DNA of 63,597 nucleotides, the filler included, from Octopus bimaculoides (taxonomy: Eukaryota), in assembly GCF_001194135.2 (NCBI RefSeq). It is 6 parts of 5 records of this genome, joined end to end, with 100 filler letters (N's around TTAATTAATTAA, not from the genome) between each part and the next. Parts side by side here need not be neighbours in the genome. Positions count along the whole stretch, not along the records: positions 7,394 to 25,732 come from NC_068994.1; 5 more parts are not named here. The stretch is one strand, 5' to 3'. How positions within the stretch are numbered: the first letter of the stretch is position 1; each line of letters opens with the position of its first letter. Below, one piece after another: positions 11,641 to 27,489 of the stretch. Position numbers and translations under genes: made by a program. The notes beneath the pieces are model-generated. The model did not search any database. It was not told the origin of the DNA and saw only the letters and a list, made by a program, of their open reading frames with translations.

Positions 11641-13268
11641 GCATGTGGCAGATGCTCAGTAGCAATAAATGCTGAAAATGTGCAGAGAACAACTTCTGCC
11701 ACATTCCAGGGAGAAAAACTACAAGTAGTTGACATCTTCCGTTACCTAGGTCAGGGGTTTTCAAACTTTTTGACTTGCGGACCCCTTTATATTTCAGGCT
11801 TAGGGACCCCCTTATAAACGCTTATGAAATTTATACATAAATATTTACTTAAAATAACATATATTTTTACATTTATTTATTTAACAGTATTTAACAAATA
11901 GGTTTATTGTCAATTAAAAGATTTCGATTAAAAACATATATAAAATCAAATTGCCCATAAAAAGTATTTGCTGTCCACGGACCCCCTGTCTTGTCCTTGC
12001 GGACCCCCTGTGGTCCGCGGACCACAGTTTGAAAACCCCTGACCTAGGTGACCAAGTCAGTAGCTCTGAAAGTGTAGCTGCTAGAATAAGAATAGCCTGG
12101 GCAAAGTTCTGAGAGCTCCTACCTCTGCCGGTGACAAAGGGCCTCTTGCTCAGAGTAAACAGTAGACTAGTATGACGCATGTGTACGAACAGCCATGCTA
12201 CATGGCAGTGAAATATGGGCCGTGACTGCTGAGGACATGCGTAAGCTTGCAAGGAATGAAGCCAGGATGCTCCGCTGGATGTGTAGTGTCAATGTGCATA
12301 CATGACAGAGTGTAAGTGCCTTGAGAGAAAAGTTGGACCTAAGAAGCATCAGATGTGGTGTGCAAGAGAGACGACTGCGCTGGTATGGTCATGTGGTTAG
12401 AATGGATGAGGATAGTTGTGTGAAAAAGTGTCCCACCCTAGCGGTTGAGGGAACCTGTGGAAGAGGTAGACCCAGGAAGACCTGGGATGAGGTAGTGAAG
12501 CATGACCTTTGAACATTGCCTCATCGAGGCAATGACTAGTGACTGAGACCTTTGGAAATATGCTGTGCTTGAGAAAACCTGGCAAGCCAAGTGAGACCAT
12601 AACCTGTGGCCTATGCCAGTGGTGTANNNNNNNNNNGTGCTTGAGAAAACCTGGCAAGCCAAGTGAGACCATAACCTGTGGCCTATGCCAGTGGTGTAAC
12701 CAGCCCACTTATGCGTACCTTTCTTTCATTGGACACTAAACTCTGTTTGCGAAGACTTGTTGAGGCAAGTGAAATCAAAATTAAATTCGCTGACATGGCT
12801 GATGACAGCACCGCATGGCTGGCATCTGTGCTAGTGGAACGCTAAGAGCACCATCCGAGCGTGATTGTTGCCAGGGCCGCTGACTGGCTCCCATGCTGGC
12901 GGCACGTAAAAAGCACCATTCAAGCATGATCATTACCACTGTTGCCTAACTGGCATGTGAAAAACAATATTCAAGCGAGGCTGTTACCAGTGCCACTAGA
13001 CTGGTTCCTGTGCAGGTGGCACAAAAAAACCCCACCATTTTGAGCATGGCCGTTGCCAGTACTGCCTGACTGGCCCTCATGCTGGTGGCACGTAAAAGCA
13101 TCCACTACACTCTTGGACTGGTTGGTGTTAGGAAGAGCATCCAGCTGTAGAAACTTTGCCAGATCAGATTGGAGCCTTGTGCAGCCATCTGACTCGCCAG
13201 TCCTCAGTCAAACCGTCCAAACCATGCCAGCATGGAAAGCAGATGTTAAACGATGATGATGATGATGA
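11640..13268 (+). mobile_element. 5'-truncated RTE (BovB-like) LINE relic with 3' UTR, ~60-bp subrepeats and (GAT)n tail
   Basis: VVDIFRYLG|DQV..VAARIRIAWAKF rejoins across the MITE, then LREKL..QERRLRWYGHVVRM..VEG..GRGRPRKTW. The 3' UTR has repeated GGCACGTAAAA(A)GCA units and ends GTTAAACGATGATGATG. Confidence 0.88.
11752..12041. mobile_element. hAT (Buster/Charlie-like) MITE, 290 bp, with 8-bp TSD
   Basis: TIRs CAGGGGTTTTTCAAACT and AGTTTGAAAACCCCTG. TSD ACCTAGGT at 11744-11751 and 12042-12049. Subterminal palindrome CTGTGGTCCGCGGACCACAG. Confidence 0.93.
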
Positions 13269-13462
13269 TGTATATATATATATATATGTATACATATATA
13301 GATAAATATTTATATATATTTATGTATATGTATATATATATATGTACATATATATTTATATGTGTGTATATATGTATGTATGTATATATGTATATATATA
13401 TATATGTGTGTGTGTGTGTATGTGTGTATGTATATATTATATATGTATGCATATATATAATG

Positions 13463-13630
13463 TGACTGCGACCATGCTGGAACACTACCTTTTGTCAAAG
13501 GAATTGACCCCAGGATTTATTCTTTGCAAGCCTAGTACTTATTCTCTCGCAGTGTTTTGCCAAACAGCAAAGTTACGGGGACGTAAACACAGCAACATCA
13601 GTTGTGAAGCAATGGTGGCGGTACAAACAG
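13463..13630 (-). mobile_element. Family A SINE 3' half; further family A pieces on + at 13690-13835 and 13925-13990
   Basis: GACTGCGACCATGCTGGAACAC..GACCCCAGGA.TTATTCTTTG.AAGCCTAGTACTTATTCT is the reverse complement of the family A tail. Confidence 0.75.
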
Positions 13631-13890
13631 ACATACACACACACATATATATACTTGTATACATATATGTGTGTGTGAGAGTGTTTTTGTAACCCCACCA
13701 TTGCTTGATGACAAATGTTGCTGTTTTTATGTCCCTGTAACTTAGCCGTTTGGCTAAACTTGCTAATAGAATATGTACTACGCTGGCAAAGAATAAATCC
13801 TGGCGTTGATTTATAACCGAAACAAGTAAAACAATAAAAAACTACACAATTTTAATCCTAAATAACGCCTGGTATCTCTGATATATTCAT

Positions 13891-13921
<31 letters not shown>

Positions 13922-14034
13922 CTTAACAACCACATGGTTCCGGGTTCATTCCCACAGCGTGGCACCTTGGGCAAGTGTCTTCTACTATAGAAAAAATATA
14001 TGTATGAGGAGTGTTAATTAAAGATTAATTTAAT

Positions 14035-14120
14035 GTCAGTCAGAAAAGATATGCAGTTATAAACACCTGGAAAATACTGGAAAGACTTCTACCAAACTTT
14101 GGTATTGAAAACTATTCAAT
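14035..14120 (+). mobile_element. Short LINE (CR1/L2-like) ORF2 C-terminal fragment
   Basis: QKRYAVINTWKILERLLPNFGI resembles the ERYxIIYxWKILExLVPN motif. Confidence 0.5.
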
Positions 14121-14338
14121 AGCAACATTTTCCTTTTATGCACCTAATTCAATGAAATTAGGTTACTCTGATTACTATGCATAAAAGACAAAATAATTTT
14201 ATTTATTCGTAGATTAGGTAGGCATAATTTGCTCCTGGTTTTCAATCTCAGTATTTAAGCTACACACAGTACTACTGTGGTACACGTGTTTCATACACTT
14301 CTACAGTACCCTTTTCTTTACGTGCTATAAAAAGAGAG

Positions 14339-14575
14339 TGGAGGCTCAATGGCCCAGTGGTCAGGGCAGCGGACTCGCGGTCATAGGATCACGGTTTCGA
14401 TTCCCAGGCCGGGCGTTGTGAGTGTTTATCGAGCGAAAACACCTAAAGCCCCACGAGGCTCCGGCGGGGGATGGTGGCGAACCCTGCTGTACTCTTTCAC
14501 CACAACTTTCTCTCACTCTTACTTCCTGTTTCTGTTGTGCCTGTAATTCAAAGGGTCAGCCTTGTCACACTGTCA
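14339..14575 (+). mobile_element. Family C SINE, truncated by N-gap, upstream of paralog 1
   Basis: High similarity to 5314-5702. It shares diagnostic variants (GCTCAATGG, GTGGTCAGGG, GCCCCACGAGG) with the copy at 17860. Confidence 0.92.
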
Positions 14576-15025
14576 NNNNNNNNNNNNNNNNNNNNNNNNN
14601 NNNNNNNNNNNNNNNNNNNNNNNNNNNNNNNNNNNNNNNNNNNNNNNNNNNNNNNNNNNNNNNNNNNNNNNNNNNNNNNNNNNNNNNNNNNNNNNNNNNN
14701 NNNNNNNNNNNNNNNNNNNNNNNNNNNNNNNNNNNNNNNNNNNNNNNNNNNNNNNNNNNNNNNNNNNNNNNNNNNNNNNNNNNNNNNNNNNNNNNNNNNN
14801 NNNNNNNNNNNNNNNNNNNNNNNNNNNNNNNNNNNNNNNNNNNNNNNNNNNNNNNNNNNNNNNNNNNNNNNNNNNNNNNNNNNNNNNNNNNNNNNNNNNN
14901 NNNNNNNNNNNNNNNNNNNNNNNNNNNNNNNNNNNNNNNNNNNNNNNNNNNNNNNNNNNNNNNNNNNNNNNNNNNNNNNNNNNNNNNNNNNNNNNNNNNN
15001 NNNNNNNNNNNNNNNNNNNNNNNTT

Positions 15026-16138
15026 GATGAAAGCAGGAAGTTAATGGAGATGGTGAGTTATTACGGCGATCAATTGCAAACTTTTTTGGACATTTTAAAT
15101 GAAACAGGCAACAAAAAGCTAGCAAAATGTATAAGTGAGAAAAAAAACGAATTTGTTTTCATGATCAAAAGTAAACAATACCTGAATCCCGAAGGAAGAC
15201 AGAATCATTGCTCGTTGTTACCTCGCAGTATACCAACGCAGTTTATTTACGAATCTAATGTTGAAGATGTCATAGATAAAGTAAAAGAGAAATATAAATG
15301 CCGCAAGCCCATAGCCGATAGATTGTATGTAGTCATCGTCTGTAAAGAAACGAACGGAGATTCTATCTTTTATACTGATGACGACAACATTTTAATTCGC
15401 AAGTTCATTGAAGATATTTATGACATCTTCGATAAAAATGAAGAAATAAAAATAATTGCCATCGTTGATGCCAATGACGAAGAGAAAGACAGAGTAAAGA
15501 CTGAGAAAGACTATTTATTTACATGTTCAATAGCAGAAAGTACAGAAATGTATATCATTGAAAAAAAAAGGAATGAGGACCTGAAAGACTTCAAGTATTG
15601 TGAGAATGTGATGGATTTGTTAAAAAAGATTCCCGATGAGAAAATGAATCTCTACTACAATTATATCTATATTATCATGATGCAGAACAGCGATAGAAAA
15701 ATACAAAAAGCATTGAATAATAAAATAAAACGTATTAAAATAGAATCTAAAAAAATGAACAAACTACAAAAAGTAGAAAATTTTGTTCAGGAAATAAAGC
15801 CTTATTTGAAGCCTGAAATGAAAAAATTCATAATATTCTTCGTAGAAAACTACTGGAAGGTTGAAGTGGCCCTTGATTATATCAAAAAATTATTTACAAA
15901 CCTCTCTGATTTGAAGAAAGAAATTGATATAGTGATACGAAAAACTGATAAACTTACAATTCCAAAAAATATTTCAGTAAAAAAGTCCGACTGGGATAAG
16001 ACAAAATATGTGAGCTTCTATGTGATGGACGAAGAGAAGTGGGTAACAATTTTGGAATCCTCAACGGAAAAACAGATCTCTGTAGATGGCTTTCTAAGAG
16101 AATACTGTTCTAAGATCGAATATGTGGAAGAAAAATAA
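15026..16138 (+). CDS. Intronless ORF (370 visible codons, 5' end in gap): CARD-like death fold plus putative catalytically inactive caspase-like region
   Basis: 1.1 kb stop-free in AT-rich DNA, with a homologous paralog at 18755-19902. ESRKLMEMVSYYGDQLQTFLDILNETGNKKLAKCI fits CARD helices 4-6. Downstream strand/helix motifs resemble the caspase fold by eye only. Confidence 0.75.
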   Translation, partial: DESRKLMEMVSYYGDQLQTFLDILNETGNKKLAKCISEKKNEFVFMIKSKQYLNPEGRQNHCSLLPRSIPTQFIYESNVEDVIDKVKEKYKCRKPIADRLYVVIVCKETNGDSIFYTDDDNILIRKFIEDIYDIFDKNEEIKIIAIVDANDEEKDRVKTEKDYLFTCSIAESTEMYIIEKKRNEDLKDFKYCENVMDLLKKIPDEKMNLYYNYIYIIMMQNSDRKIQKALNNKIKRIKIESKKMNKLQKVENFVQEIKPYLKPEMKKFIIFFVENYWKVEVALDYIKKLFTNLSDLKKEIDIVIRKTDKLTIPKNISVKKSDWDKTKYVSFYVMDEEKWVTILESSTEKQISVDGFLREYCSKIEYVEEK

Positions 16139-17530
16139 GGACTTGTAGGAATTTCATGATTTATATATCTCGAATAAGCAAAATACAGTGATTAGCTTGC
16201 TCCCCACTTCAAGTGTGTCTGAAGCATATTTGGACTGATAATAACATTCCAATCATATATCTTCATTCCAGCTTGAATCATAAAAGTACAGATGTTCTTA
16301 TCACTGTGGAATAACTCCCTGCTTCCAAGGCCTGTTTTTCCATAATGATCTTAAAAATTTATGTTTTTAATGAAATGTAGTTATACATTTTAGAGATGGT
16401 GTTTATTATGATAATATTGGAGACAGGAGAATTGAATATGAAATTGTTTGAAGGAACATTCCACTCTTCACTGACATTGTTAAAATTATGTTTTTGAATG
16501 AAATTTTCTAGAGATATGTTTTTGAGGTCCTAGATTATGATTATCTTGATTAAAGTTAGGAAAAACAAAAATACAAGTTTCAAGTGGTTCCATATCATTG
16601 CCAAAAATAAAGAGGCACTCATAAGTTCCTGTATTGTGTGAAACCTGTGGTCATTTTCCACTTTAATTTGCTCAAGAGAATTCTTTGAAAGAAATATTTT
16701 CGAACAAGTTTGAGTAGAATGCTAACACTTCATTTATTGAATACATATTTCTTTCATTCAAAGGGTTGAAGGAAAATTGAACATGTTTTTCAAGTTTTAT
16801 CATGAAAATCATACTCTATACGCTTAAAAATGTATCTCTGAAAAACTTTAGTAAAAAAAAGTAAGCATTTTAAAGAAAGTTATGAGGAAAGAAAATACTG
16901 ACGATGGGGTAAAATTTTGTAGTTACACCAAAAACGTTTTGTTATATTAAAGATTTTTATTTCATTCCATAGTTAAAGTTTTGGAGAGCATAACATTTGA
17001 AAGAGTGACATGATATTAAAGCATACAGTTATATAGTTTACTTCAGTTAAAGGGAATTATTTGGTATTTTTCAGTGGAGATTATTATAAAGTGCCTTTAA
17101 TTTTGGTGGAAAACCATTTCATTTTATTCACACTGTTGATGTGCTTGTTTTATGCATAAGCATTAAGCCTCCATATACTGCTGAAATTTCCGAGATGCTT
17201 TGCTTAATGAAAAGAAACTAAGAGCAAAAATTAATCAGACTTCAAAGTCTTGCTTTTTAAAGTTGTTTTTGTTTCTTTTCTTTGTTTCTTTTCTGTTTTC
17301 TCTTAGTTCTACAGATTTTAATGATTGAAAAAGATTTTCAAATACTAAATTCAATAAAGTATTAAACTGCTCTTTGATATGCCAGCTGTTCATGTCCTTT
17401 TTTTGTATGCCACGTCTATGGGCAAGTAAATTTATCTTCATTAAGGTCTTTGATAAATTACCTTGAGAAATATATTTGGGATTATTGCGTTGTAAGTTCA
17501 GTTTTCACTGAGGTCAAATTTGCCTATCGC
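16139..17530. repeat. 3' flank of paralog 1, duplicated at 19903-20445 and 21020-22185
   Basis: Shared blocks such as TAAGGACTTGTAGGAATTTCATGATTTATAT, GAAATTGTTTGAAGGAACATTCC (three copies, ~16440, ~20225, ~21028) and TTTTCACTGAGGTCAA. Confidence 0.85.
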
Positions 17531-17859
17531 TGCAAAGAACGGTGACAATGGTATTAGACGTAAACACGTGGACCATCATATCACTTGTTTGGCATTGTGC
17601 TTATTCACAACCATCGGAGGGCGACACGCTCCTCACGGACGCAAGTTCTGCGTCGGATCCAGAGTTATGAACATAAAATGCACATGTACACACTGAATTC
17701 ATAAAACCGAAGAGAGGGATAAAAACAAGTTGTTATCTTCAAGTTTAGGGAGGTAAAAAGTAAATAAAAATATACAAGGGAAATAACTCAACATCTTACT
17801 AGTATTATCCGTACTAATCTGAAATGTTTTCTTTTTTAGCTGTTTATAAATAAATCACA

Positions 17860-18249
17860 GTGGATGCTCAATGGCCCAGTGGTCAGGGCAGCGGACTCGC
17901 GGTCATAGGATCGCGGTTTCGATTCCCAGATCGGGCGTTGTGAGTGTTTATTGAGCGAAAACACCTAAAGCCCCACGAGGCTCCGGCGGGGGATGGTGGC
18001 GAACCCTGCTGTACTCTTCCACCACAACTTTCTCTCACTCTTACTTCCTGTTTCTGTTGTGCCTGTAATTCAAAGAGTCAGCCTTGTCACATTGTGTCAC
18101 GCTGAATATCCTCGAGAACTACGTTAAGGGTACACGTGTCTGTGGAGTGCTCAGCCACTTGCACGTTAATTTCACGAGCAGGCTGTTCCGTTGATCAGAT
18201 CAACTGGAACCCTCGACGTCGTAAGCGACAGAGTGCTAACAACAACAAT
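17860..18249 (+). mobile_element. Family C SINE, full length, upstream of paralog 2
   Basis: Complete head to (AAC)n tail, with the same diagnostic variants as the 14339 copy. Confidence 0.92.
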
Positions 18250-18754
18250 NNNNNNNNNNNNNNNNNNNNNNNNNNNNNNNNNNNNNNNNNNNNNNNNNNN
18301 NNNNNNNNNNNNNNNNNNNNNNNNNNNNNNNNNNNNNNNNNNNNNNNNNNNNNNNNNNNNNNNNNNNNNNNNNNNNNNNNNNNNNNNNNNNNNNNNNNNN
18401 NNNNNNNNNNNNNNNNNNNNNNNNNNNNNNNNNNNNNNNNNNNNNNNNNNNNNNNNNNNNNNNNNNNNNNNNNNNNNNNNNNNNNNNNNNNNNNNNNNNN
18501 NNNNNNNNNNNNNNNNNNNNNNNNNNNNNNNNNNNNNNNNNNNNNNNNNNNNNNNNNNNNNNNNNNNNNNNNNNNNNNNNNNNNNNNNNNNNNNNNNNNN
18601 NNNNNNNNNNNNNNNNNNNNNNNNNNNNNNNNNNNNNNNNNNNNNNNNNNNNNNNNNNNNNNNNNNNNNNNNNNNNNNNNNNNNNNNNNNNNNNNNNNNN
18701 NNNNNNNNNNNNNNNNNNNNNNNNNNNNNNNNNNNNNNNNNNNNNNNNNNNNNA

Positions 18755-19902
18755 TCTGAATGTTTAAAAGACATCGACCGAGTTATTGATTTGGCACGCA
18801 AGAAGGAAATTTTGAATGAACACGAAAAAAATTATGTGAATGAAAGCAGGAAGTTAATAGAGATGGTGAGTTATTACGGCGATCAATTGCAAACTTTTTT
18901 GGACATTTTAAATGAAACAGGCAACAAAAAGCTAGCAAAATGTATAAGTGAGAAAAAAAACGAATTTGTTTTCATGATCAAAAGTAAACAATACCTGAAT
19001 CCCGAAGGAAGACAGAATCATTGCTCGTTGTTACCTCGCAGTATACCAACGCAGTTTATTTACGAATCTAATGTTGAAGATGTCATAGATAAAGTAAAAG
19101 AGAAATATAAATGCCGCAAACCCATAGCCGATAGATTGTATGTAGTTATTGCCTGTAAAGATCTTTCCGAAATATTTACTAAGGGTTATGAGGAAGATGA
19201 AATGAGCCGTTTACTCATACATATGTATAATATATTCGGTGAAAGTAAAGAAATAAAAGTAATTGTCAACCTTGCTTCAATCACCGGAAAGGAAAATTGC
19301 TATTTTTTGCCATCCTCAATGATGGGAAACATAGAGATGTATATCATTAAAAGTAAAAAGGATGAGGAACTGAAAGACTTGAAAGTTTGTACGAGTGTTG
19401 CAGATACGTTAAAAAAAAGATTACAGTAGCAAAATAACTTTCACCGAGAGTTATACGTATCTTCTTGCGACGAATTCCAATAAGAGTGATAGAAACTAAG
19501 TTGTGTTCTGTTAACATGGTCAGTTTAAGACGACGTTCATTAAGTGATTGTGCAAAAATCGCTCAAGAAAATATAAATAAGAAACAAGACAAAATCAGGG
19601 GCGTTGAACTAAGGTCCAAGATCAAACGAATCATAATAATTTTTGTAGAAGCATTCTGTGACAGTGAAGAGGTTACTAATTTGTTTGAAACGTGCTACAA
19701 ATTGGAGAAAAGAATTGATATAGTAATTAAAAACGGCGAAGAAGGATATAAACTGAAAGACTCTGAGTGGAAGAAGAAACATAATGTGTTCATTTATGAC
19801 CAGGACAAAATTGTGAAGATAAAATCCTTGAAAGAAAAGATCTCTGTAGATAATTTTCTTAGAGAATACTGTACCAAGATCGGTGATGAGAATGAACAAT
19901 AA
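18755..19902 (+). pseudogene. Paralog of the CARD-like ORF, disrupted by frameshifts (or sequencing errors) around 19400-19500
   Basis: Frame 18755-19429 aligns to paralog 1 and stops just after an A8 run (A6 in paralog 1). The C-terminal homology (IIIFVEAF..IDIVIK..ISVDNFLREYCTKI) resumes in another frame and ends at a stop homologous to that of paralog 1. Confidence 0.72.
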
Positions 19903-20446
19903 GGACTTGTAGGAATTTCATGATTTATATGTCTTCAACAAGCGAGATATATTCTCGGTGACAAAACGCAGTGATTAACTTTTTCCCCAGTTTGAGCATA
20001 TTCGGATTTATAATAACATTGCAATTATATACCTTCAGTCAATTCTGAATCAGAAAAGTACAGATGTTTATAAGACTTTACAATAACTACAGTCGTTTTT
20101 TACTCTCTTCTCGTTAGGCCTGTTTGTCGATAACGTTCTTAAAAGCTTGTTTTTAATGAAATGGAGTGATACATTTTAGATGGTGTATATTACGATAATA
20201 TTGGAAGCAGAATATTTGAAAACGAAATTGTTTGAAGGAACATTCCGTTCTTCACTGACTTTGTAAAATACATAAAATTTTTCTAGAGATATGTCTTTGA
20301 AGCACTAGATTATGATTATCTTGATAAAAGTTGGAATCCCCGCACAGAAAAAAGCAAGTTTCAATAATTCCATGTCATTGCTAGAAATAGAGGCACGCAT
20401 AGGTTCCTAGTTTGTGTGAATCCTGTTGTCAACTTTGCTTATCATT

Positions 20447-21010
20447 TTTCTAGGGCTCGAGAAATAAAAATGGTGGATTGGTAGAATCCCCAGAGAGTTT
20501 GACGAGATGACATACAATGTTTATTCCATCTTTTTGTATTCCGATTTTAAATCGTGCAATGGCTTTTATAGGTTGAAGACTCGATCCTATTTAACAACAC
20601 TACCCTGGGTGCTTTAGTGGAGCCCACACAATTGCAAGCAAGCAAGCAATCAAGCAAGCAAGCAATCAAGCAAGCAATCAATCAAGCAAGCAAGCAAGCA
20701 AGCAAGCATTGAGACCATATATCTGGTTTGAGGATACGTTCTACAAACTGTTTTGCAGGACCCAGTATGAGGTTGTCTCCAAAAGTTTTGTGTATTGTAC
20801 GGGAGATAATTGCGTGCAATTTAATGAGATTTATCTCCCCGTGATAGTATTGGAATTATTTTTGCCTGACCTCACATTCACTGCTTCAGTTTTGAAGGCA
20901 ATTCTGTAGGGAGAATGAGAGGAAGGCTACATGGTCTCATTAACATTCATGGCTGTGTTGTTAAGAAGTATGCTTTGCAACCACTTTGTTTTTGAATACA
21001 TCCCAGTGTG
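20447..21010. repeat. ~0.5-kb duplicated block, second copy at 22184-22700
   Basis: Both begin TTTTTC(T/C)AGGGCTCGAGAAATAAAAATGG and end TTTGAATACATCCCAGTGTG. They differ by an (AAGC/AATC)n expansion and a 15-bp indel. Confidence 0.88.
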
Positions 21011-22974
21011 TATAGTGTCATGAAAATGAAATTGTTTGAAGGAACATTCCGCTCTTCACTGACATTGTTAAATACATACGTTTTAATGAAAATTTCTAGA
21101 GATACGTCTTTGAGGCCCTAGATTATGAATATAGAGATTAAAGTGGACCCCCTACGAAAAAACAAAACAAAAAACAATAACATAAATTTCGAGTAATTCC
21201 ATGTCATTGCCAGAAATAAAGAGGTACTCATAAGTTCCTGTTGTCGCTTTTCTCTTTAATTTGCTCAAGAAAATTCTTCGAAACAATATTTTTGAAAATG
21301 CGGAGTAGAATGCTAACACTCCATGTATTGAGTACATGTCTCTTTCATTCAAAATGTTGATAGATAGAAATATAAATAAAAAAATTGGACAGCGGATAAT
21401 GGAAGGATTTTTAAACGCTTCTCACCGGAAAAATCAATATTTTTTTTCAAGTTTTATCACACTAATCATATTCTATACACTTAAAATCGAATCTCTGAAG
21501 AACTTCAATAAAAAACAGTAAGCATTTTAAAGAAAGTTACAAGGACAGAAATTGCAGACGATGGGACACAATTTTGTAGTCATACCAAAAATGTTTTCTT
21601 TTATTAAAGATTTTCGTATTATTCCATAATCAAAGTTATTGAAAGCGTAAGATTTGAAGTTGTAACATGATATTAAAGCTTGTATTTAAATATTTTACTT
21701 CAGCTAAAAGGGATAATTTGGCATTTTTTAATAGAGACTATAATAAAGTGCCTTCAATTTCGGTAGCAAACTGTTTCATTTTATTCATACTGCTGATGTG
21801 CTTGTTTTATGCTCTAACATTAAACTTACATGTACTCATGAAATTTCCGAGATGCTTTGCTTAATGAAATTAAACCTCAAACGTCTTATTTTTTTTAAAA
21901 ACTTGCTTGTCTTCGTGTCTTTCTTTGTTTTTTTTTTTCTCTCTCTCTTTGTTCTACAGATTTTAATCATTGTAAAGGTTTTTGAAATGCGGAGTTAAAT
22001 AAAATATTGAACTACTAATTGAAGTGCCAGCTGTTCATATACTTTTTCATTGTACGGCACCTTTTCTATGGGCATGTAAATTTATCCTCATTAGGGTTTT
22101 GGACGATATACTTTGAGTAATATATTTTGGTTCATTACGTTGTGTGTTCAATTTTCACTGAGGTCAACTTCGCTTATCATTTTTCCAGGGCTCGAGAAAT
22201 AAAAATGGAGGATTGGTAGAATCTCCAGAGAGTTTGACGAGATGACATACAATGTCTATTCCGTCTTTTTGTGCTCCGATTTCAAATCGTGCAATGGCTT
22301 TTATAGGTAGAAGACTTAATCCTATTTAACAACACCGTCTTTGGTGCTTTAGTGGAGCCCATACAATTGCAAGCAAGCAAGCATTCCGACCATATGTCTG
22401 GTTTGAGGATAAATTTTTGTAACAGTTTTAAAGGGCCCAGTATGGGGCTGTCTTCAAAGAGTAGCACCGAAATAGTATTGTGTAATGCACGGGAGATAAT
22501 TGCGTACAATTTAATGAGATTTATCTCCCCGTGATAGTATTGGAAATATTTTTGCCTGACGTCACAATGAACGCTTTAGTTTTGAAGACAATACTGTAGG
22601 GAGAATGAGAGGACGGCTACATGGTCTCATTAACATTCATGGGTGTGTTGTTAAGAAGTATGCTTTGCAACCACTTTGTTTTTGAATACATCCCAGTGTG
22701 CAGCATTGTGTATAAATGTTTTCTATTATAGTGTCCGGATCTTTTTTAAAACGGGGGCCACATTTTTCATTAACGAAACACTTTGAAACTTGGAACACTG
22801 GTAGAATGTGTCATATAAAACATCTTTTTCTCTTAGTCTTCTTAAAAAAAAAAGAAATCCATAAGTTATTCCATGTGAAAGTTGTCGTATTTCTGTAATT
22901 TCAACCAATCACTGACGTCCATTCAGTCGATATACATTAAGTGCCGACTACATAAACAAACGATTCTGAAACAA

Positions 22975-23014
22975 TTAACCCTAACCCTAACCCTAACGTT
23001 AGGGTTAGGGTTAA
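22975..23014. repeat. Interstitial telomere-like (CCCTAA)n-(TTAGGG)n palindrome; further (TTAGGG)6 at ~23470-23508
   Basis: Perfect 32-bp palindrome at 22982-23013 centred on AACGTT. Confidence 0.9.
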
Positions 23015-23699
23015 AGCAANNNNNNNNNNNNNNNNNNNNNNNNNNNNNNNNNNNNNNNNNNNNNNNNNNNNNNNNNNNNNNNNNNNNNNNNNNNNNNNNN
23101 NNNNNNNNNNNNNNNNNNNNNNNNNNNNNNNNNNNNNNNNNNNNNNNNNNNNNNNNNNNNNNNNNNNNNNNNNNNNNNNNNNNNNNNNNNNNNNNNNNNN
23201 NNNNNNNNNNNNNNNNNNNNNNNNNNNNNNNNNNNNNNNNNNNNNNNNNNNNNNNNNNNNNNNNNNNNNNNNNNNNNNNNNNNNNNNNNNNNNNNNNNNN
23301 NNNNNNNNNNNNNNNNNNNNNNNNNNNNNNNNNNNNNNNNNNNNNNNNNNNNNNNNNNNNNNNNNNNNNNNNNNNNNNNNNNNNNGTGTGTGCGTGCGTG
23401 TGCGTGCGTGTGCGCGCGAGTGTGTTTGTGCGTGTGTGCACGCGAGGTGTACTTGCGGTTTGCTAGAGGTTTAGGGTTAGGGTTAGGGTTAGGGTTAGGG
23501 TTAGGGTTACGCTCCTCAAAAAAATGAAGAGGTTTCTATTTTCATTCATATCCCCTTAAGGCAGATAATATGCGAAAAAAAAAAAAAGCCCTGTTGTCAT
23601 TGTTGCTATATGGGCGACTTAGAAATTTCTAGCTTTCTAAATATTCATCTCCTTTCTAACTTTTGCGGGTGACCAGTGATTTTCAGCGACGGGAAGTCT

Positions 23700-23975
23700 T
23701 TTGCATTGACCCTAGTGCTCAAACGGTACTTATTTTATTGTCCCGGAACAGATGAAAGCAAAGCCAAGCTCGGCAGAATCTAAATATTGGTACCAAATTT
23801 TGGCACAAGGCCAGCACTTTCGGGGAAGGGTGTAAATTGATTACATCGAGCTCAGGACTCAACTTGGTCCTTGTTTTATTGACGCTGAAACGATGAAAAG
23901 CAAAGTCGATCTTGGCAGAATTTGAACGCAGAACGTAAAGACGTCCGAAATGCTGTTAAACATTTTTTGCCAGCT
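23700..23975 (-). mobile_element. Family B SINE, two partial diverged copies
   Basis: GGCACAAGGCCAGCA..GATTACATCG..AAAGCAAAGTCGATCTTGGCAGAATTTGAAC.CAGAACGTAAAGACG. Confidence 0.72.
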
Positions 23976-24932
23976 CGGCGTCTTGAATTTGATTAAATAT
24001 CGCTAGGCGTTTTGTTCTGAATGTTCGGAAGCCTGTGATGGAAATGTTTCAACTGTATTAATGAGAGAAAATCTTTGTAAAAGTTCGGACACGATAAAGG
24101 CACTACATTTTAACCAATGGCTTCCAAATATAACCAGTGATGATCTCGGACAAACAATAATGACTATTGCCGAAGAACTTCAGGTGCTGCAATGGACTAT
24201 TAGACCTGCAGTGCACGAGGACATGCTTGCCCCACGTTCCATATTCGCATGAGCTTGCACCTTTTGAGTCCCTCCTGTTTCAGCCACGTTAAAAGTTAGT
24301 AAACGGACTGAACTTCAAATCTGAAAACGATGTAAAAATTTATTTACAAACGTTTTTTGCCAGTAAAGACAGGAAATTCTTTAAGCAGGGAATGATGAAT
24401 CTGTCCCCACATGATAGAAGGTACTGGAACGAAACTGTAATTACATATTTGATTGAATAAATTGTTTTGTGTTTAAAACCCGTGTCTTATTTTCGCTGAA
24501 AAAAAGCTTCAACATACTTTGTGGCAAACCTAATATGTACACACACACACACACACGCACGCACACACAAACGCACACACACACACACACACACNNNNNN
24601 NNNNNNNNNNNNNNNNNNNNNNNNNNNNNNNNNNNNNNNNNNNNNNNNNNNNNNNNNNNNNNNNNNNNNNNNNNNNNNNNNNNNNNNNNNNNNNNNNNNN
24701 NNNNNNNNNNNNNNNNNNNNNNNNNNNNNNNNNNNNNNNNNNNNNNNNNNNNNNNNNNNNNNNNNNNNNNNNNNNNNNNNNNNNNNNNNNNNNNNNNNNN
24801 NNNNNNNNNNNNNNNNNNNNNNNNNNNNNNNNNNNNNNNNNNNNNNNNNNNNNNNNNNNNNNNNNNNNNNNNNNNNNNNNNNNNNNNNNNNNNNNNNNNN
24901 NNNNNNNNNNNNNNNNNNNNNNNNNNNNNNNN

Positions 24933-24964
<32 letters not shown>

Positions 24965-25557
24965 TTCATTCACACACACACGCACACACACGCGCACGCA
25001 CAAGATTTAATGATATTTGCGAAAAACCTTGAAGTATGCTACTCAAAGTTCGTCGACAGTCATTAGCTACCAAATGTCATCATACTTTTGTCACTGGATA
25101 TAAATTTGGAAATCTATATTATCCATAGAGTTTATGTAAAGGTACAAGGAAGTGAAAATGGATTGAACGACATTATTTATTTCATATTAATACAATTGTT
25201 TCCATTAATTGTCACATCTATAGCACATCGGTGAGATGGTATAATTATTATCTTACGTAATTACTATTACCTATCAAAGGTGTATAGTGTGTTTCTTCAG
25301 ATGAGCATTTTGAATAAGTCCTGAGTAAGACCAGGCTGTCATTGCATTCTGTACAAGAATGAAAACTCAAGAAAACTACCCCAATAGCGAACAGTAGAAA
25401 AAAGAGATGTTTCTATTTATATTACTTCGATTACACATATTATTAGTTAACTGTGGATAGCTATGTATAATTATATAAAACTATCTAAATCTAAGCAAGC
25501 AGACTCTCGTGTTTCAATGTTGTTGTAGACTTCCGTTGTTGGCAGATTTAAAACTCA

Positions 25558-25702
25558 ACGTAGTTGCTGAAAAGTTCCTGGCTTTAAGAGTATTGCGAAA
25601 GGCCTGGCTTGATGCCCAAACTTCCGGGTTCTTTGACAGGGCTTAGAAAAACTGAAGGACCACTGCAATAAGTGTGTGAATCTGAGATGGTAATATGTTG
25701 AA
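25558..25702 (+). mobile_element. Short mariner-derived non-autonomous fragment
   Basis: TIR-like ACGTAGTTGCTGAAAAGTTCCTGGCTTT, followed by HCNKCVNLR..YVE resembling the mariner transposase C-terminus (W.KCV..G.YVE). Confidence 0.5.
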
Positions 25703-27489
25703 CTTTTCAGCGCCCCTCGTACACACACACACNNNNNNNNNNNNNNNNNNNNNNNNNNNNNNNNNNNNNNNNNNNNTTAATTAATTAANNNNNNNNNNNN
25801 NNNNNNNNNNNNNNNNNNNNNNNNNNNNNNNNTATATATATATATAACATACATCCATACGCCTGTGTGTGTGCGCGGGCCCATTTATGTGTACGTTGAG
25901 GACGAGATTGGTGGGAAGCTGGAATTAAAGTATTAGTGTAATAATGAAGAACCAATAGAATTGACAGAATTGAAGTTAGAAATGTGTGTGTGTTCAGTGC
26001 GTAATCAAAGGTGGATAACTTGTTTCTCTGTGTAGGTTGTGAAATATAGACGTATTTGAAAGAAATCTTGTAATGGCTTACGCAAAAGAATAGATGGCAT
26101 TTATATATGACATTATTTTCTTCCCGAAATTTCCAAGTTAACATTCCTTCTGAAAAGATAAATATTTAATAAAATTTTACTATTGTGTTTTTCGTTCAGC
26201 TAATGGTTTAAGGTTTGATATACATACATGCATACATACATACATTCATACATACAAACAAACATACATACATACATACATAGATACAAACATACATACA
26301 TACATACATACATACATCCATACTCACTCACACATATACATACATACATGTGTGTGTGTAAATGCTGATATTCTTGTGGGAGATGTGAACATCCAATGTT
26401 TTATAAGTATTCGCATTTCTTTTCGGATGTATACTTCTATATATCTTTTTAAACATCGTTCCATTATTTTAATACTTTCGATTACAGTGTTAGACATCTG
26501 CGCATGATTACAGCTGAGTACTGGGAGATATTTCATTATCTTTGCAGATGGCGGCTGAATATATTTTTTCTTCCATCGCTAATTTCGTTGAAAGTTTCAG
26601 AAGTGAGCTGTTTTTAATATCCTATATTTGATGCATGGTTAAAACAAACATGACATAGTAAAATCTTCATTAAAGTTGTTCAAAAGGTGACAAGAACAAT
26701 TATACATCTTCCTGCATGGGTGAAAGTATTCCATGTATCACTACTGTATGTTAGAAACACCAAATATAGCCAAAAACATAAGCACCGCTGTGTAGGTTAA
26801 TCACGACCGCAATAGATTCCGTGATCCACCACATAATTTACCAGCCGTCATTACTTGACCAATAAAAGAACACAATCACTCATCAAATATTACCCGACAG
26901 AATTCATTCGTTTCTGTTAAATAAGGTTAAGATGGCTATATTTGTAGAAACTATGACCTCTGATTTATGGAATCTGTTATTCATTTTTCTGTTAACTTCT
27001 GTTAACACCTCAGCGATGTTAAGTCCACTAAATTTTCCAGTATACCGATATATAAAATTTGAATTTGATTAGTGACGAAGAATTTGATTTGTGAAAAAAG
27101 ACTGACAGAGAATAACGGATAAATTAACGTTAAGTAAGAAAAACAGGTTTTATCGGTAATGTGAACGACTGGAAACTTACCAATGATGATCTTACTTGCC
27201 TGTCATTGCTGAGTGCTTAAATATATGTTATCATGTAGATGTGTAACCTAGCCATTAATTGTCGCACCCATACACAGTCAATCTCTATCTCTTTCTCTAT
27301 CTCTCTCTCCCTCACACACACACACGCACGCACATAGTTTAAAGATCCACGCATCAAAGAAATTCTACTGTATCCATTGAGAGATGGATATCAATTTAAT
27401 ACATGCTCTTATGATACTTCAATAGCCATATTTATAAAATATGCCATGTATCCTAAAGCAATGTTTCAGGCTCCGTTTATAAGTTATAT

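What the first reader, a model, noticed from the sequence alone, without database searches (positions are those of the whole stretch)
15029..19902. Mosaic paralog pair: near-identical 5' tract, abrupt switch to a hypervariable coding region
Seen: 15029-15333 vs 18842-19146 differ at only 2 of 305 positions in my by-eye comparison. Immediately after ..DRLYVV the proteins drop to roughly one-third to 40% identity (estimate), with indels. The stop codon and first ~28 nt of the 3' UTR are identical again, and the noncoding 3' flanks look more similar than the coding middle. Inference: recent gene conversion homogenised the CARD end while the C-terminal region diversified, as expected of an immune or allorecognition-type locus under diversifying selection. 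Alternatively these are two highly divergent alleles assembled in tandem.
Basis: partly seen in the sequence, partly recalled or inferred. Interest (0 to 1): 0.72.

Follow-up and report, generated by a model that had tools for sequence, protein, structure and literature searches.

The report
Octopus CARD gene pair, half-homogenised
Two neighbouring octopus genes for a CARD-domain protein keep their front halves almost identical by copying from one another, while their back halves are old, very different and fast-evolving. This is a clean but not unprecedented case of domain-limited gene conversion, in an uncharacterised octopus-only gene family.

Summary
15029-15333 and 18842-19146 differ at 2 of 305 bases. 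Identity then falls to 57% at DNA level and 32% at protein level. The stop codon plus 28 nt of 3' UTR are identical again, and the 3' flanks (77%) are more alike than the coding middle.

The piece is octopus DNA. Octopus vulgaris carries the same tandem, intronless pair (P0002, P0003), and both proteins pass Pfam's CARD threshold.

A four-sequence comparison decides the question:
- In the 5' tract, 23 informative sites group the copies by species and 0 by paralog.
- After the switch, 107 group by paralog, 5 by species and 5 crosswise.
- Independent scans put the breakpoint at the same alignment column in both species.

So the 5' module (CARD plus about 65 residues) has been homogenised by gene conversion in both lineages since they split. 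The C-terminal divergence is older than the split. The "two alleles" and mis-assembly readings are excluded.

The C-terminal part evolves fast. dN/dS is 0.96-1.9 depending on method (ML 1.68, p=0.03). dN is about 2.8 times the neighbouring non-coding divergence, yet the ORFs stay open. That points to positive selection but does not prove it.

The gap at 18250-18753 hides B's first 9 codons and does not interrupt the compared segments.

The parts
14319..14575 (+). SINE-like repeat with a tRNA-like head upstream of copy A, cut off by the assembly gap
   Evidence: 96.6% identical to 17859-18095. About 87% identical to a copy at L001 19785-19995. Alignment. No ARAGORN or Rfam hit.
14576..15023 (.). 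Assembly gap hiding copy A's 5' UTR and about codons 1-45
   Evidence: N run. A's first readable codon aligns with residue 46 of P0002.
15026..16138 (+). Copy A (A-type CARD gene): partial intronless CDS of 370 codons plus the stop at 16136-16138. Orthologue of O. vulgaris P0002.
   Evidence: Open frame. 64% amino-acid identity to P0002. 84.7% DNA identity over 2367 nt including the flank to L001 10135-12477.
15027..15348 (+). Homogenised (gene-converted) tract in copy A. Encodes the end of the CARD plus about 68 residues. The left end is cut by the gap.
   Evidence: 305/307 identical to B. The last species-type site is 15296 and the first paralog-type site is 15334. The max-chi2 breakpoint falls after 15348.
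15349..16062 (+). Fast-evolving, paralog-specific coding region of copy A
   Evidence: 57% nucleotide and 32% amino-acid identity to B. 77% nucleotide and 57% amino-acid identity to the orthologue. dN/dS 0.96-1.86.
16063..16166 (+). Conserved C-terminal motif (ISVD.FL.EYC.KIG), stop codon and 28-nt 3' UTR block shared by both paralogs and both species
   Evidence: 81-89% identity in all six pairwise comparisons. 28 nt after the stop are identical in A and B.
16139..17528 (+). 3' flank of copy A, paralogous to B's flank
   Evidence: 73.6-77.8% identical to 19832-20431, 21021-21360 and 21427-22178. 91% identical to the O. vulgaris A flank.
17841..18249 (+). SINE-like repeat upstream of copy B, running into the gap. 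The nature of 18096-18249 is unknown.
   Evidence: 18096-18249 has no match in L001, L002 or elsewhere in the piece.
18250..18753 (.). Assembly gap hiding copy B's ATG, codons 1-9 and 5' UTR
   Evidence: N run. 18755 aligns with residue 10 of P0003.
18755..19417 (+). Copy B (B-type), first reading-frame piece: CARD from residue 10, the homogenised tract 18840-19161, then B-type sequence
   Evidence: 73% amino-acid identity to P0003 residues 10-239. Translation.
19411..19418 (+). A8 run carrying a +1 frameshift relative to O. vulgaris VB. Read straight through, the frame stops at 19427-19429.
   Evidence: Four-way DNA alignment and frame translations.
19419..19469 (+). Copy B, second frame piece (DYSSKITFTESYTYLLA), followed by a net 2-nt deletion near 19470
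   Evidence: tblastn finds P0003 238-259 in a different frame. Alignment.
19474..19902 (+). Copy B, third frame piece running to the stop at 19900-19902
   Evidence: tblastn finds P0003 252-401 in a third frame. ORF 19465-19902.
19903..22178 (+). 3' flank of copy B. It contains an internal direct duplication (20428-21010 matches 22163-22700). The distal part is orthologous to L001 14434-16445.

Best explanation
This is a tandem pair of intronless genes of an octopod-restricted family. The encoded protein has an N-terminal CARD (caspase recruitment domain, a homotypic signalling adaptor) followed by about 320 residues of unclassified alpha/beta sequence.

The duplication that made the A-type and B-type copies predates the split between this octopus and O. 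vulgaris. Since that split, in each lineage separately, non-allelic gene conversion has repeatedly overwritten the first ~0.5 kb of one copy with the other. In O. vulgaris the tract runs from about 48 nt upstream of the ATG to codon ~150. In this window the last event is very recent: 0.65% divergence between the copies, against about 10% between the species.

Conversion stops at the same place in both species. Beyond that point the two copies are too different (57% identity, with indels) to pair, so the boundary maintains itself. Selection against mixing the two C-terminal types may add to this; that part is inferred.

The C-terminal part changes amino acids as fast as or faster than neutral DNA changes, while its reading frame stays open in three of the four genes. 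The most likely reading is positive selection on a recognition or target surface, with the shared CARD module kept uniform so that both copies can feed the same CARD partner. This function is inferred, not shown.

In this window copy B carries two frameshifts and shows an accelerated substitution rate. It is most likely a young pseudogene that still exchanges sequence with the intact copy A.
For: Family and organism:
- Only three hits among 5.8 billion proteins: the window's own model and two O. vulgaris proteins.
- Both O. vulgaris proteins pass Pfam's CARD gathering score, 27.0 and 25.3 against 23.9, at residues 8-82.
- An exhaustive HMM search adds only an Argonauta hians protein and an unrelated multi-CARD protein.
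- The O. vulgaris genes are tandem, on the same strand, and single-exon.

Concerted evolution:
- The 5' tract has 23 sites grouping by species and 0 by paralog. The middle has 107 by paralog, 5 by species and 5 crosswise.
- Within-species identity in the tract is 99.3% (window) and 97.7% (O. vulgaris), against 90-91.5% between species.
- Synonymous sites are homogenised too: dS is 0.035 within species against 0.18-0.20 between species.
- Independent max-chi2 scans choose the same alignment column in both species, with p=4e-53 and 9e-57.

Fast C-terminal evolution:
- Orthologue amino-acid identity is 57-62% in the C-terminal part, against 82-84% in the N-terminal part.
- dN/dS for the A-type is 0.96 (NG86), 1.32 (LWL85), 1.86 (YN00) and 1.62-1.68 (ML). 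The likelihood-ratio test against 1 gives p=0.032. The N-terminal part is at about 0.5.
- Non-coding orthologous divergence is p=0.09 in six segments totalling 3.2 kb. C-terminal pN is 0.229 (Fisher p=4e-10).
- Under neutral simulation at the observed divergence, the C-terminal ORF stays open in at most 0.5% of replicates per lineage. Three of the four genes are open.

Copy B broken:
- Frameshifts shown.
- The window-B lineage has 44 unique nucleotide changes against 24 in the O. vulgaris B-type gene, p=0.02.
Against: - Only two species, four sequences and one outgroup were available, so there are no site or branch models and no polymorphism data.
- The excess of dN/dS over 1 depends on method. 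NG86 gives 0.96 with a bootstrap interval of 0.65-1.46. The ML test uses my own GY94 implementation and is only nominally significant.
- Gene order differs between the species. The window has A then B; O. vulgaris has B then A. Strict orthology of the two B-type copies is therefore uncertain, and the window's order depends on scaffolding across gaps.
- The two frameshifts in B, one of them in a homopolymer, could be errors of a gap-rich draft assembly. No other stop codon is present in the corrected B frame.
- The function of the C-terminal region is unknown: no Pfam or PDB match, and the AlphaFold model is at pLDDT 45.
- CARD is not detectable by Pfam in the window's own fragments.
Confidence: 0.85

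Rival explanations
1. Assembly artefact. The contig end next to the gap in copy A was built from, or polished with, reads of copy B (a collapsed repeat), so the near-identity is not biological.
For: The identical tract begins exactly at the contig edge next to gap 14576-15023. The assembly is a gap-rich draft and shows at least one unmerged overlap at 12565-12626 and 12637-12698.
Against: - The copies still differ at two sites, each of which is a private derived change relative to O. vulgaris.
- A gapless chromosome-level assembly of another species shows the same tract (97.7% identical) ending at the same alignment column.
- The tract carries 23 substitutions shared by both window copies against both O. 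vulgaris copies.
Confidence: 0.04
2. The two copies are divergent alleles (haplotigs) of one locus, wrongly scaffolded in tandem.
For: A gap separates the two units, so their adjacency rests on scaffolding.
Against: - O. vulgaris has both types side by side on one gapless chromosome record.
- Each window copy has its own orthologue: 107 sites group by paralog against 5 by species and 5 crosswise.
- The flanks are 23% diverged and structurally different. That is far more than the 9% non-coding divergence between the two species.
Confidence: 0.01
3. There is no gene conversion. The 5' module is simply under very strong purifying selection while the rest drifts.
For: The N-terminal module is the only part alignable with Argonauta. 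Its dN/dS of about 0.5 is lower than that of the C-terminal part.
Against: - Purifying selection cannot create 23 substitutions shared by the paralogs within a species with none shared by orthologues.
- It cannot hold synonymous divergence within a species at 0.035 when it is 0.18-0.20 between species.
- The module is not especially conserved between species: 90% identity, the same as non-coding DNA.
Confidence: 0.01
4. Gene conversion is real, but the C-terminal region is merely unconstrained (relaxed selection, a family on its way to decay) rather than positively selected. The breakpoint is purely mechanical, marking where homology ends.
For: - NG86 dN/dS is 0.96 and 0.87, with bootstrap intervals that include 1.
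- B-type ML omega is 1.12 and not significant.
- One of the four genes is already broken.
- The family is tiny and lineage-restricted.
Against: - Three ORFs of 253-267 codons remain open in 30-34% GC sequence, where neutral evolution keeps them open in at most 0.5% of simulations per lineage.
- All A-type indels between the species are multiples of three.
- dN of 0.27-0.33 is about three times the neighbouring non-coding divergence of 0.10.
- ML omega for the A-type is 1.68, p=0.03.
Confidence: 0.3

Closest known systems
Domain-limited interlocus gene conversion (concerted evolution) in tandem paralogs, e.g. primate Siglec-11/Siglec-16 and other paired immune receptors, RHD/RHCE, red/green opsins (from general knowledge, not tested here)
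   Same: - One segment of two tandem paralogs groups by species while the rest groups by paralog.
- The tract boundary is sharp.
- Synonymous sites are homogenised.
- Conversion recurs independently in separate lineages.
- A pseudogene can be one of the partners.
   Different: - In paired receptors the homogenised part is usually the ligand-binding domain and the divergent part is the signalling tail. Here the signalling adaptor (CARD) end is homogenised and the putative recognition or effector end diverges.
- The genes are intronless, so the boundary is not an exon or intron edge. By the low-confidence secondary-structure prediction it falls inside an alpha/beta region.
CARD-domain proteins (Pfam PF00619), e.g. 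CARD adaptors and CARD-bearing sensors such as MDA5/RIG-I, NOD1/2, Apaf-1, initiator caspases
   Same: N-terminal CARD in the O. vulgaris orthologues above Pfam's gathering score. The best PDB sequence match is an MDA5 CARD, but only at E=0.47, which is not significant.
   Different: No NACHT, helicase, caspase, kinase or other known partner domain was detected. The remaining ~320 residues match nothing. The family is restricted to octopods in the databases searched.
Plant and animal NLR or other immune-gene clusters with birth-and-death evolution and fast-evolving recognition domains (from general knowledge)
   Same: - Tandem arrangement.
- One member is pseudogenised.
- Copy order differs between related species.
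- The non-signalling part evolves at dN/dS of 1 or above.
   Different: - Only two copies per species.
- No LRR or other repeat domain.
- No nucleotide-binding domain.
- An immune role has not been tested.

Membership tests
Interlocus gene conversion / concerted evolution | Within the tract, paralogs of one species are closer to each other than to their orthologues | tested here: met
   99.3% and 97.7% identity within species against 90-91.5% between species. 23 sites group by species and 0 by paralog.
Interlocus gene conversion / concerted evolution | Outside the tract, the same genes show orthologous (paralog-specific) relationships, so the duplication is older than the speciation | tested here: met
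   107 paralog-grouping sites against 5 by species and 5 crosswise. A gene plus flank is 84.7% identical to L001 10135-12477, and the B gene is 80.2% identical to L001 7952-9220.
Interlocus gene conversion / concerted evolution | Homogenisation affects silent sites as well, so it is not explained by protein constraint | tested here: met
   dS is 0.035 within species against 0.18-0.20 between species in the tract.
Interlocus gene conversion / concerted evolution | Discrete, statistically supported tract boundary | tested here: met
   Max-chi2 gives the same column in both species, with Fisher p=4e-53 and 9e-57. The 5' boundary in the window cannot be tested because of the gap.
CARD domain (PF00619) | Match to the Pfam CARD profile at or above the gathering score | tested here: inconclusive
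   Met for the orthologues P0002 (27.0 bits) and P0003 (25.3 bits) against a cut-off of 23.9. Not met for the window's own fragments, where no CARD hit appears. A's CARD is mostly in the gap, and B lacks 9 codons plus an 8-codon deletion.
CARD domain (PF00619) | Six-helix death-fold bundle | tested here: inconclusive
   The AlphaFold model predicts helices over residues 9-82, but pLDDT there is only 31-39.
Positively (diversifying) selected gene region | dN/dS significantly above 1 | tested here: inconclusive
   A-type C-terminal part: 0.96 (NG86; bootstrap 0.65-1.46), 1.32 (LWL85), 1.86 (YN00), 1.68 (GY94 ML; LRT p=0.032). B-type: 0.87-1.36, not significant.
Positively (diversifying) selected gene region | Excess of non-synonymous fixed differences relative to polymorphism, or high allelic diversity | not testable with these tools
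   No population or read data were available.
Pseudogene (copy B) | Reading frame disrupted relative to intact orthologues | tested here: met
   +1 in the A8 run at 19411-19418 and a net -2 near 19470. Three tblastn pieces lie in three frames. The lineage is accelerated, 44 against 24 unique changes. Whether the lesions are real cannot be checked without reads.
NLR / RLR / caspase type CARD proteins | Presence of a NACHT, helicase or caspase catalytic domain next to the CARD | tested here: not met
   No such Pfam hit at E up to 1-10 on the window proteins or on the orthologues. The PDB profile search found only a CARD, at E=0.47.

The most novel reading that the evidence does not exclude
The pair could be an octopod-specific innate-immune or self/non-self sensor module. 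In that reading, gene conversion keeps a common CARD signalling handle interchangeable, while the C-terminal recognition halves are driven apart by an arms race or by balancing selection. The locus would then be highly polymorphic, with copy-number and order variation between species. That would be a cephalopod invention analogous in logic, but unrelated in sequence, to NLR and paired-receptor systems.
Probability: 0.2. Interest if true: 0.7.

Novelty: new member of a known kind. Interest (0 to 1): 0.45.

Why it matters
Cephalopod innate immunity is poorly understood at the molecular level, and lineage-restricted 'orphan' genes are usually left unannotated. Here such a family turns out to have three notable properties:
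- a recognisable signalling domain (CARD);
- a recombination behaviour reproduced in two species, with the same breakpoint;
- a C-terminal half that evolves about three times faster than the surrounding non-coding DNA while staying open.

That makes it a concrete candidate for a fast-evolving immune or recognition gene in octopus. It is also a compact natural example of how gene conversion and divergence partition a single-exon gene.

For genome annotation, the finding shows that the window's own model of copy A (362 aa) is truncated by an assembly gap, and that copy B is unannotated and probably a pseudogene.

Tried and rejected
- **Pfam on the window's own ORF pieces.** No significant hit and no CARD. 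The CARD call rests on the orthologues.
- **Structure prediction.** AlphaFold2 on a 5-row alignment gave mean pLDDT 45. Foldseek against the PDB returned KaiC and glutamate-receptor N-terminal domains at TM about 0.2 and rmsd about 22 Å. These are meaningless beyond 'alpha/beta'.
- **PDB sequence-profile search.** Only an MDA5 CARD at E=0.47.
- **Internal duplication of the C-terminal region.** No significant self-match.
- **More family members.** An exhaustive HMM search of 1.84 billion representatives found only Argonauta P0004 and an unrelated multi-CARD protein. A search with B's C-terminal part found only P0003.
- **Other assemblies of the window species.** Exact-protein look-ups for the A model and for B's last ORF found nothing. 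The frameshifts and gaps could therefore not be checked independently.
- **The upstream repeat.** ARAGORN and Rfam found no hit. I could not decide whether the two copies were co-converted or inserted independently. Their upstream flanks are not homologous, and 18096-18249 matches nothing available.
- **Literature.** Two searches found nothing on this family.
- **A possible intron in copy B.** A 98-nt GT..AG interval (19426-19523) would restore B's frame. Such pairs arise easily by chance and the interval is homologous to coding sequence in O. vulgaris, so I do not rely on it.
- **Hypotheses rejected.** Allele, mis-assembly and pure-purifying-selection readings are rejected (see the rival explanations).

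Full report
**What the piece is**

The readable piece (7394-25732) is AT-rich animal DNA. It contains microsatellites, a SINE-like repeat and six assembly gaps. A self-comparison shows a tandem segmental duplication:
- Unit A runs from 14337 to 17528 and unit B from 17859 to 22178.
- Each unit consists of a SINE-like repeat (96.6% identical between units), an assembly gap, an open reading frame and a 3' flank.
- The 3' flanks are 73.6-77.8% identical.

**Gap test (asked for first)**

The gap at 18250-18753 lies between the upstream repeat of unit B and the first readable codon of copy B.
- Base 18755 aligns with residue 10 of the two intronless O. vulgaris homologues. The gap therefore hides the ATG, nine codons and the 5' UTR.
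- No reading frame runs across the gap. The 'ORFs' that run through N are artefacts.
- The gap at 14576-15023 likewise hides about codons 1-45 of copy A.
- Only the relative order and adjacency of the two units depend on scaffolding.

**Check of the observation**

- 15029-15333 and 18842-19146 differ at 2 of 305 positions: 15046 G/A and 15307 G/A.
- Identity also covers 15027-15028 and is then cut by the gap, so the tract's left end is unknown.
- After the switch, nucleotide identity is 57% with many indels, and amino-acid identity is 77/241 = 32%.
- The last ~75 nt of coding sequence, the stop codon and 28 nt of 3' UTR are conserved again. The 28 nt are identical.
- The 3' flank is 77% identical, clearly more than the coding middle.
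- A max-chi2 scan gives p=4e-53 for the breakpoint.
- One correction: copy B is not one frame. Relative to its O. vulgaris counterpart it has a +1 insertion in the A8 run at 19411-19418 and a net 2-nt deletion near 19470. Read straight through, it stops at 19427-19429.

**Identity of the genes**

A search of 5.8 billion proteins with copy A found only three hits:
- the window's own gene model, P0001. It has 362 aa and starts at the first Met after the gap, so it is truncated by the assembly.
- two Octopus vulgaris proteins, P0002 (410 aa, 64% identical) and P0003 (401 aa, 48% identical).

Both O. vulgaris proteins pass Pfam's CARD gathering score at residues 8-82. The window's own fragments do not.

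An exhaustive profile search of 1.84 billion representatives added only a 259-aa Argonauta hians protein and an unrelated multi-CARD protein. The Argonauta protein is single-copy within its 20.8-kb locus. By BLAST it aligns with the Octopus proteins only over residues ~8-150.

So this is a small octopod-restricted family with an N-terminal CARD and about 320 residues of unclassified alpha/beta sequence. Attempts to classify that part failed: the AlphaFold model has pLDDT 45, Foldseek TM scores are about 0.2, and no PDB or Pfam match was found.

**The decisive comparison**

The O. vulgaris locus (L001, a gapless chromosome record) carries P0003 at 7926-9131 and P0002 at 10001-11233. The two genes are tandem, on the same strand, and each is a single exon.

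Copy A plus its flank is 84.7% identical over 2367 nt to the P0002 gene and flank. Copy B is 80.2% identical to the P0003 gene.

In a four-sequence DNA alignment:
- The 307-nt 5' tract has 23 sites where the two copies of a species agree against the other species, and none grouping by paralog.
- The coding middle has 107 sites grouping by paralog, 5 by species and 5 crosswise.
- Within-species identity in the tract is 99.3% (window) and 97.7% (O. vulgaris). Between species it is 90-91.5%.
- Silent sites show the same pattern: dS is 0.035 within species and 0.18-0.20 between species.
- The last species-type site is 15296 and the first paralog-type site is 15334.
- Separate max-chi2 scans in each species choose the same alignment column: window 15348/19161, L001 10458/8383.
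- In O. vulgaris the homologous tract starts 48 nt upstream of the ATG.

This pattern has one explanation. The duplication is older than the species split, and the 5' ~0.5 kb has been homogenised by gene conversion at least once in each lineage after the split. In the window the last event is recent: 0.65% divergence, with one private derived change in each copy.

Purifying selection alone, haplotype mis-scaffolding and a contig-end artefact are all excluded by this test (see the rival explanations).

**Evolution of the C-terminal part**

- Orthologues are only 57% (A-type) and 62% (B-type) identical in amino acids here, against 82-84% in the N-terminal module.
- Non-coding orthologous DNA in the same locus differs by p=0.09 in six segments totalling about 3.2 kb.
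- The proportion of non-synonymous differences in the A-type C-terminal part is 0.229 (dN 0.27-0.33). That is about 2.8 times the non-coding value (Fisher p=4e-10).
- dN/dS depends on method: 0.96 (NG86, bootstrap 0.65-1.46), 1.32 (LWL85), 1.86 (YN00) and 1.68 (my GY94 F3x4 ML implementation). The likelihood-ratio test of the ML estimate against omega=1 gives 2dlnL=4.61, p=0.032.
- The B-type gives 0.87-1.36, not significant. The N-terminal module gives about 0.5.
- The region is not simply decaying. In 30-34% GC sequence, neutral substitution at the observed divergence leaves a 253-267-codon frame open in at most 0.5% of simulations per lineage. Yet three of the four genes are open.
- All indels between the A-type orthologues are multiples of three.

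I read this as probable positive selection on part of the C-terminal region. It is suggestive, not proven.

**Copy B**

With the two frame corrections there is no other stop codon in 381 codons. The lineage has accumulated more unique nucleotide changes than its O. vulgaris counterpart (44 against 24, p=0.02).

It is most likely a young pseudogene that still takes part in conversion with copy A. Errors in a draft assembly cannot be excluded. No annotated protein for copy B exists in the databases searched.

**Mechanism proposed**

Shown:
- recurrent conversion of the 5' module in two lineages;
- a breakpoint at the same place in both;
- ancient and fast-evolving 3' parts.

Inferred:
- The boundary persists because the copies are too diverged beyond it to form heteroduplex DNA. 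Selection against mixing the two C-terminal types may add to this.
- The uniform CARD module lets both proteins dock on the same CARD partner, while the variable halves recognise or are targeted by something that changes quickly.
- An immune role is a reasonable guess from the CARD and the evolutionary mode, but it was not tested.

**Comparison with known systems**

Domain-limited concerted evolution of tandem paralogs is well known (paired immune receptors, RH, opsins; from general knowledge). This is a new example, in a family that has not been described; two literature searches found nothing.

It differs from the paired-receptor pattern in that the signalling end is the homogenised part. 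It is not an NLR, an RLR or a caspase, because no such domain is present.

**Verdict**

The gene-conversion interpretation is supported. Diversifying selection is suggestive. The allele and artefact alternatives are refuted. This is a new member of a known kind of phenomenon and is of moderate interest.

Noticed in passing
window 15026-19902 versus L001 7926-11233: Gene order differs between the species. The window has A-type then B-type; O. vulgaris has B-type then A-type, only 870 bp apart.
- Window B is contiguous with DNA orthologous to L001 14434-19070, which lies downstream of the O. vulgaris A flank.
- Window 13472-13990 matches L001 9441-9749, the spacer between the two O. vulgaris genes.

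This suggests a three-copy ancestor or a rearrangement, so strict orthology of the two B-type genes is uncertain.
   Followed up: partly
window 14319-14575 and 17841-18249: A SINE-like repeat with a tRNA-like head sits upstream of both copies in the same orientation. The two copies are 96.6% identical, and each is followed by an assembly gap. It is absent upstream of the O. vulgaris genes, where one copy lies at L001 19785-19995. The DNA upstream of the two repeats is not homologous. I could not decide between co-conversion and independent insertion.
   Followed up: partly
window 12565-12626 and 12637-12698: 62 nt are 100% identical on both sides of a 10-N gap. This is most likely an unmerged contig overlap, i.e. 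an assembly artefact.
   Followed up: no
window 9252-9548 (- strand): A 98-aa ORF carries the motifs HQDNARPHT and P.DYYLF, which look like the C-terminal part of a mariner/Tc1-type transposase. That identification is from my own knowledge; Pfam gave no hit at E<=0.01.
   Followed up: partly
window 20428-21010 and 22163-22700: A direct duplication of about 0.55 kb (86-91% identical) lies inside copy B's 3' flank. Both copies also match L001 13409-13998 and 16118-17134, so this is a local repeat family.
   Followed up: no
window 18830-18840 versus L001 8033-8056 and 10108-10131: Copy B in the window lacks 8 codons (KSF.HGSY) inside the CARD that both O. vulgaris genes have. Whether copy A shares the deletion is hidden by the gap. 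This may be why Pfam does not detect a CARD in the window fragment.
   Followed up: partly
window 19426-19523: A GT..AG interval of 98 nt would join B's first and third frames in phase and skip both frameshifts. It could let B make a shorter protein, but it may be chance. RNA data are needed (read).
   Followed up: no
window 13507-13806; 10570-10714; 13246-13485; 24539-25002: There is a 300-nt self-inverted repeat (80% identical) and long TA/CA-rich microsatellite blocks. Several of these border assembly gaps.
   Followed up: no
L002 10001-10780 (Argonauta hians): The Argonauta homologue is single-copy within the 20.8-kb locus fetched and is only 259 aa long. By eye it keeps a C[DE]NVM..LK motif near its end that resembles the A-type CENVMDLLKK. 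This hints that the A-type is closer to the ancestral form.
   Followed up: partly
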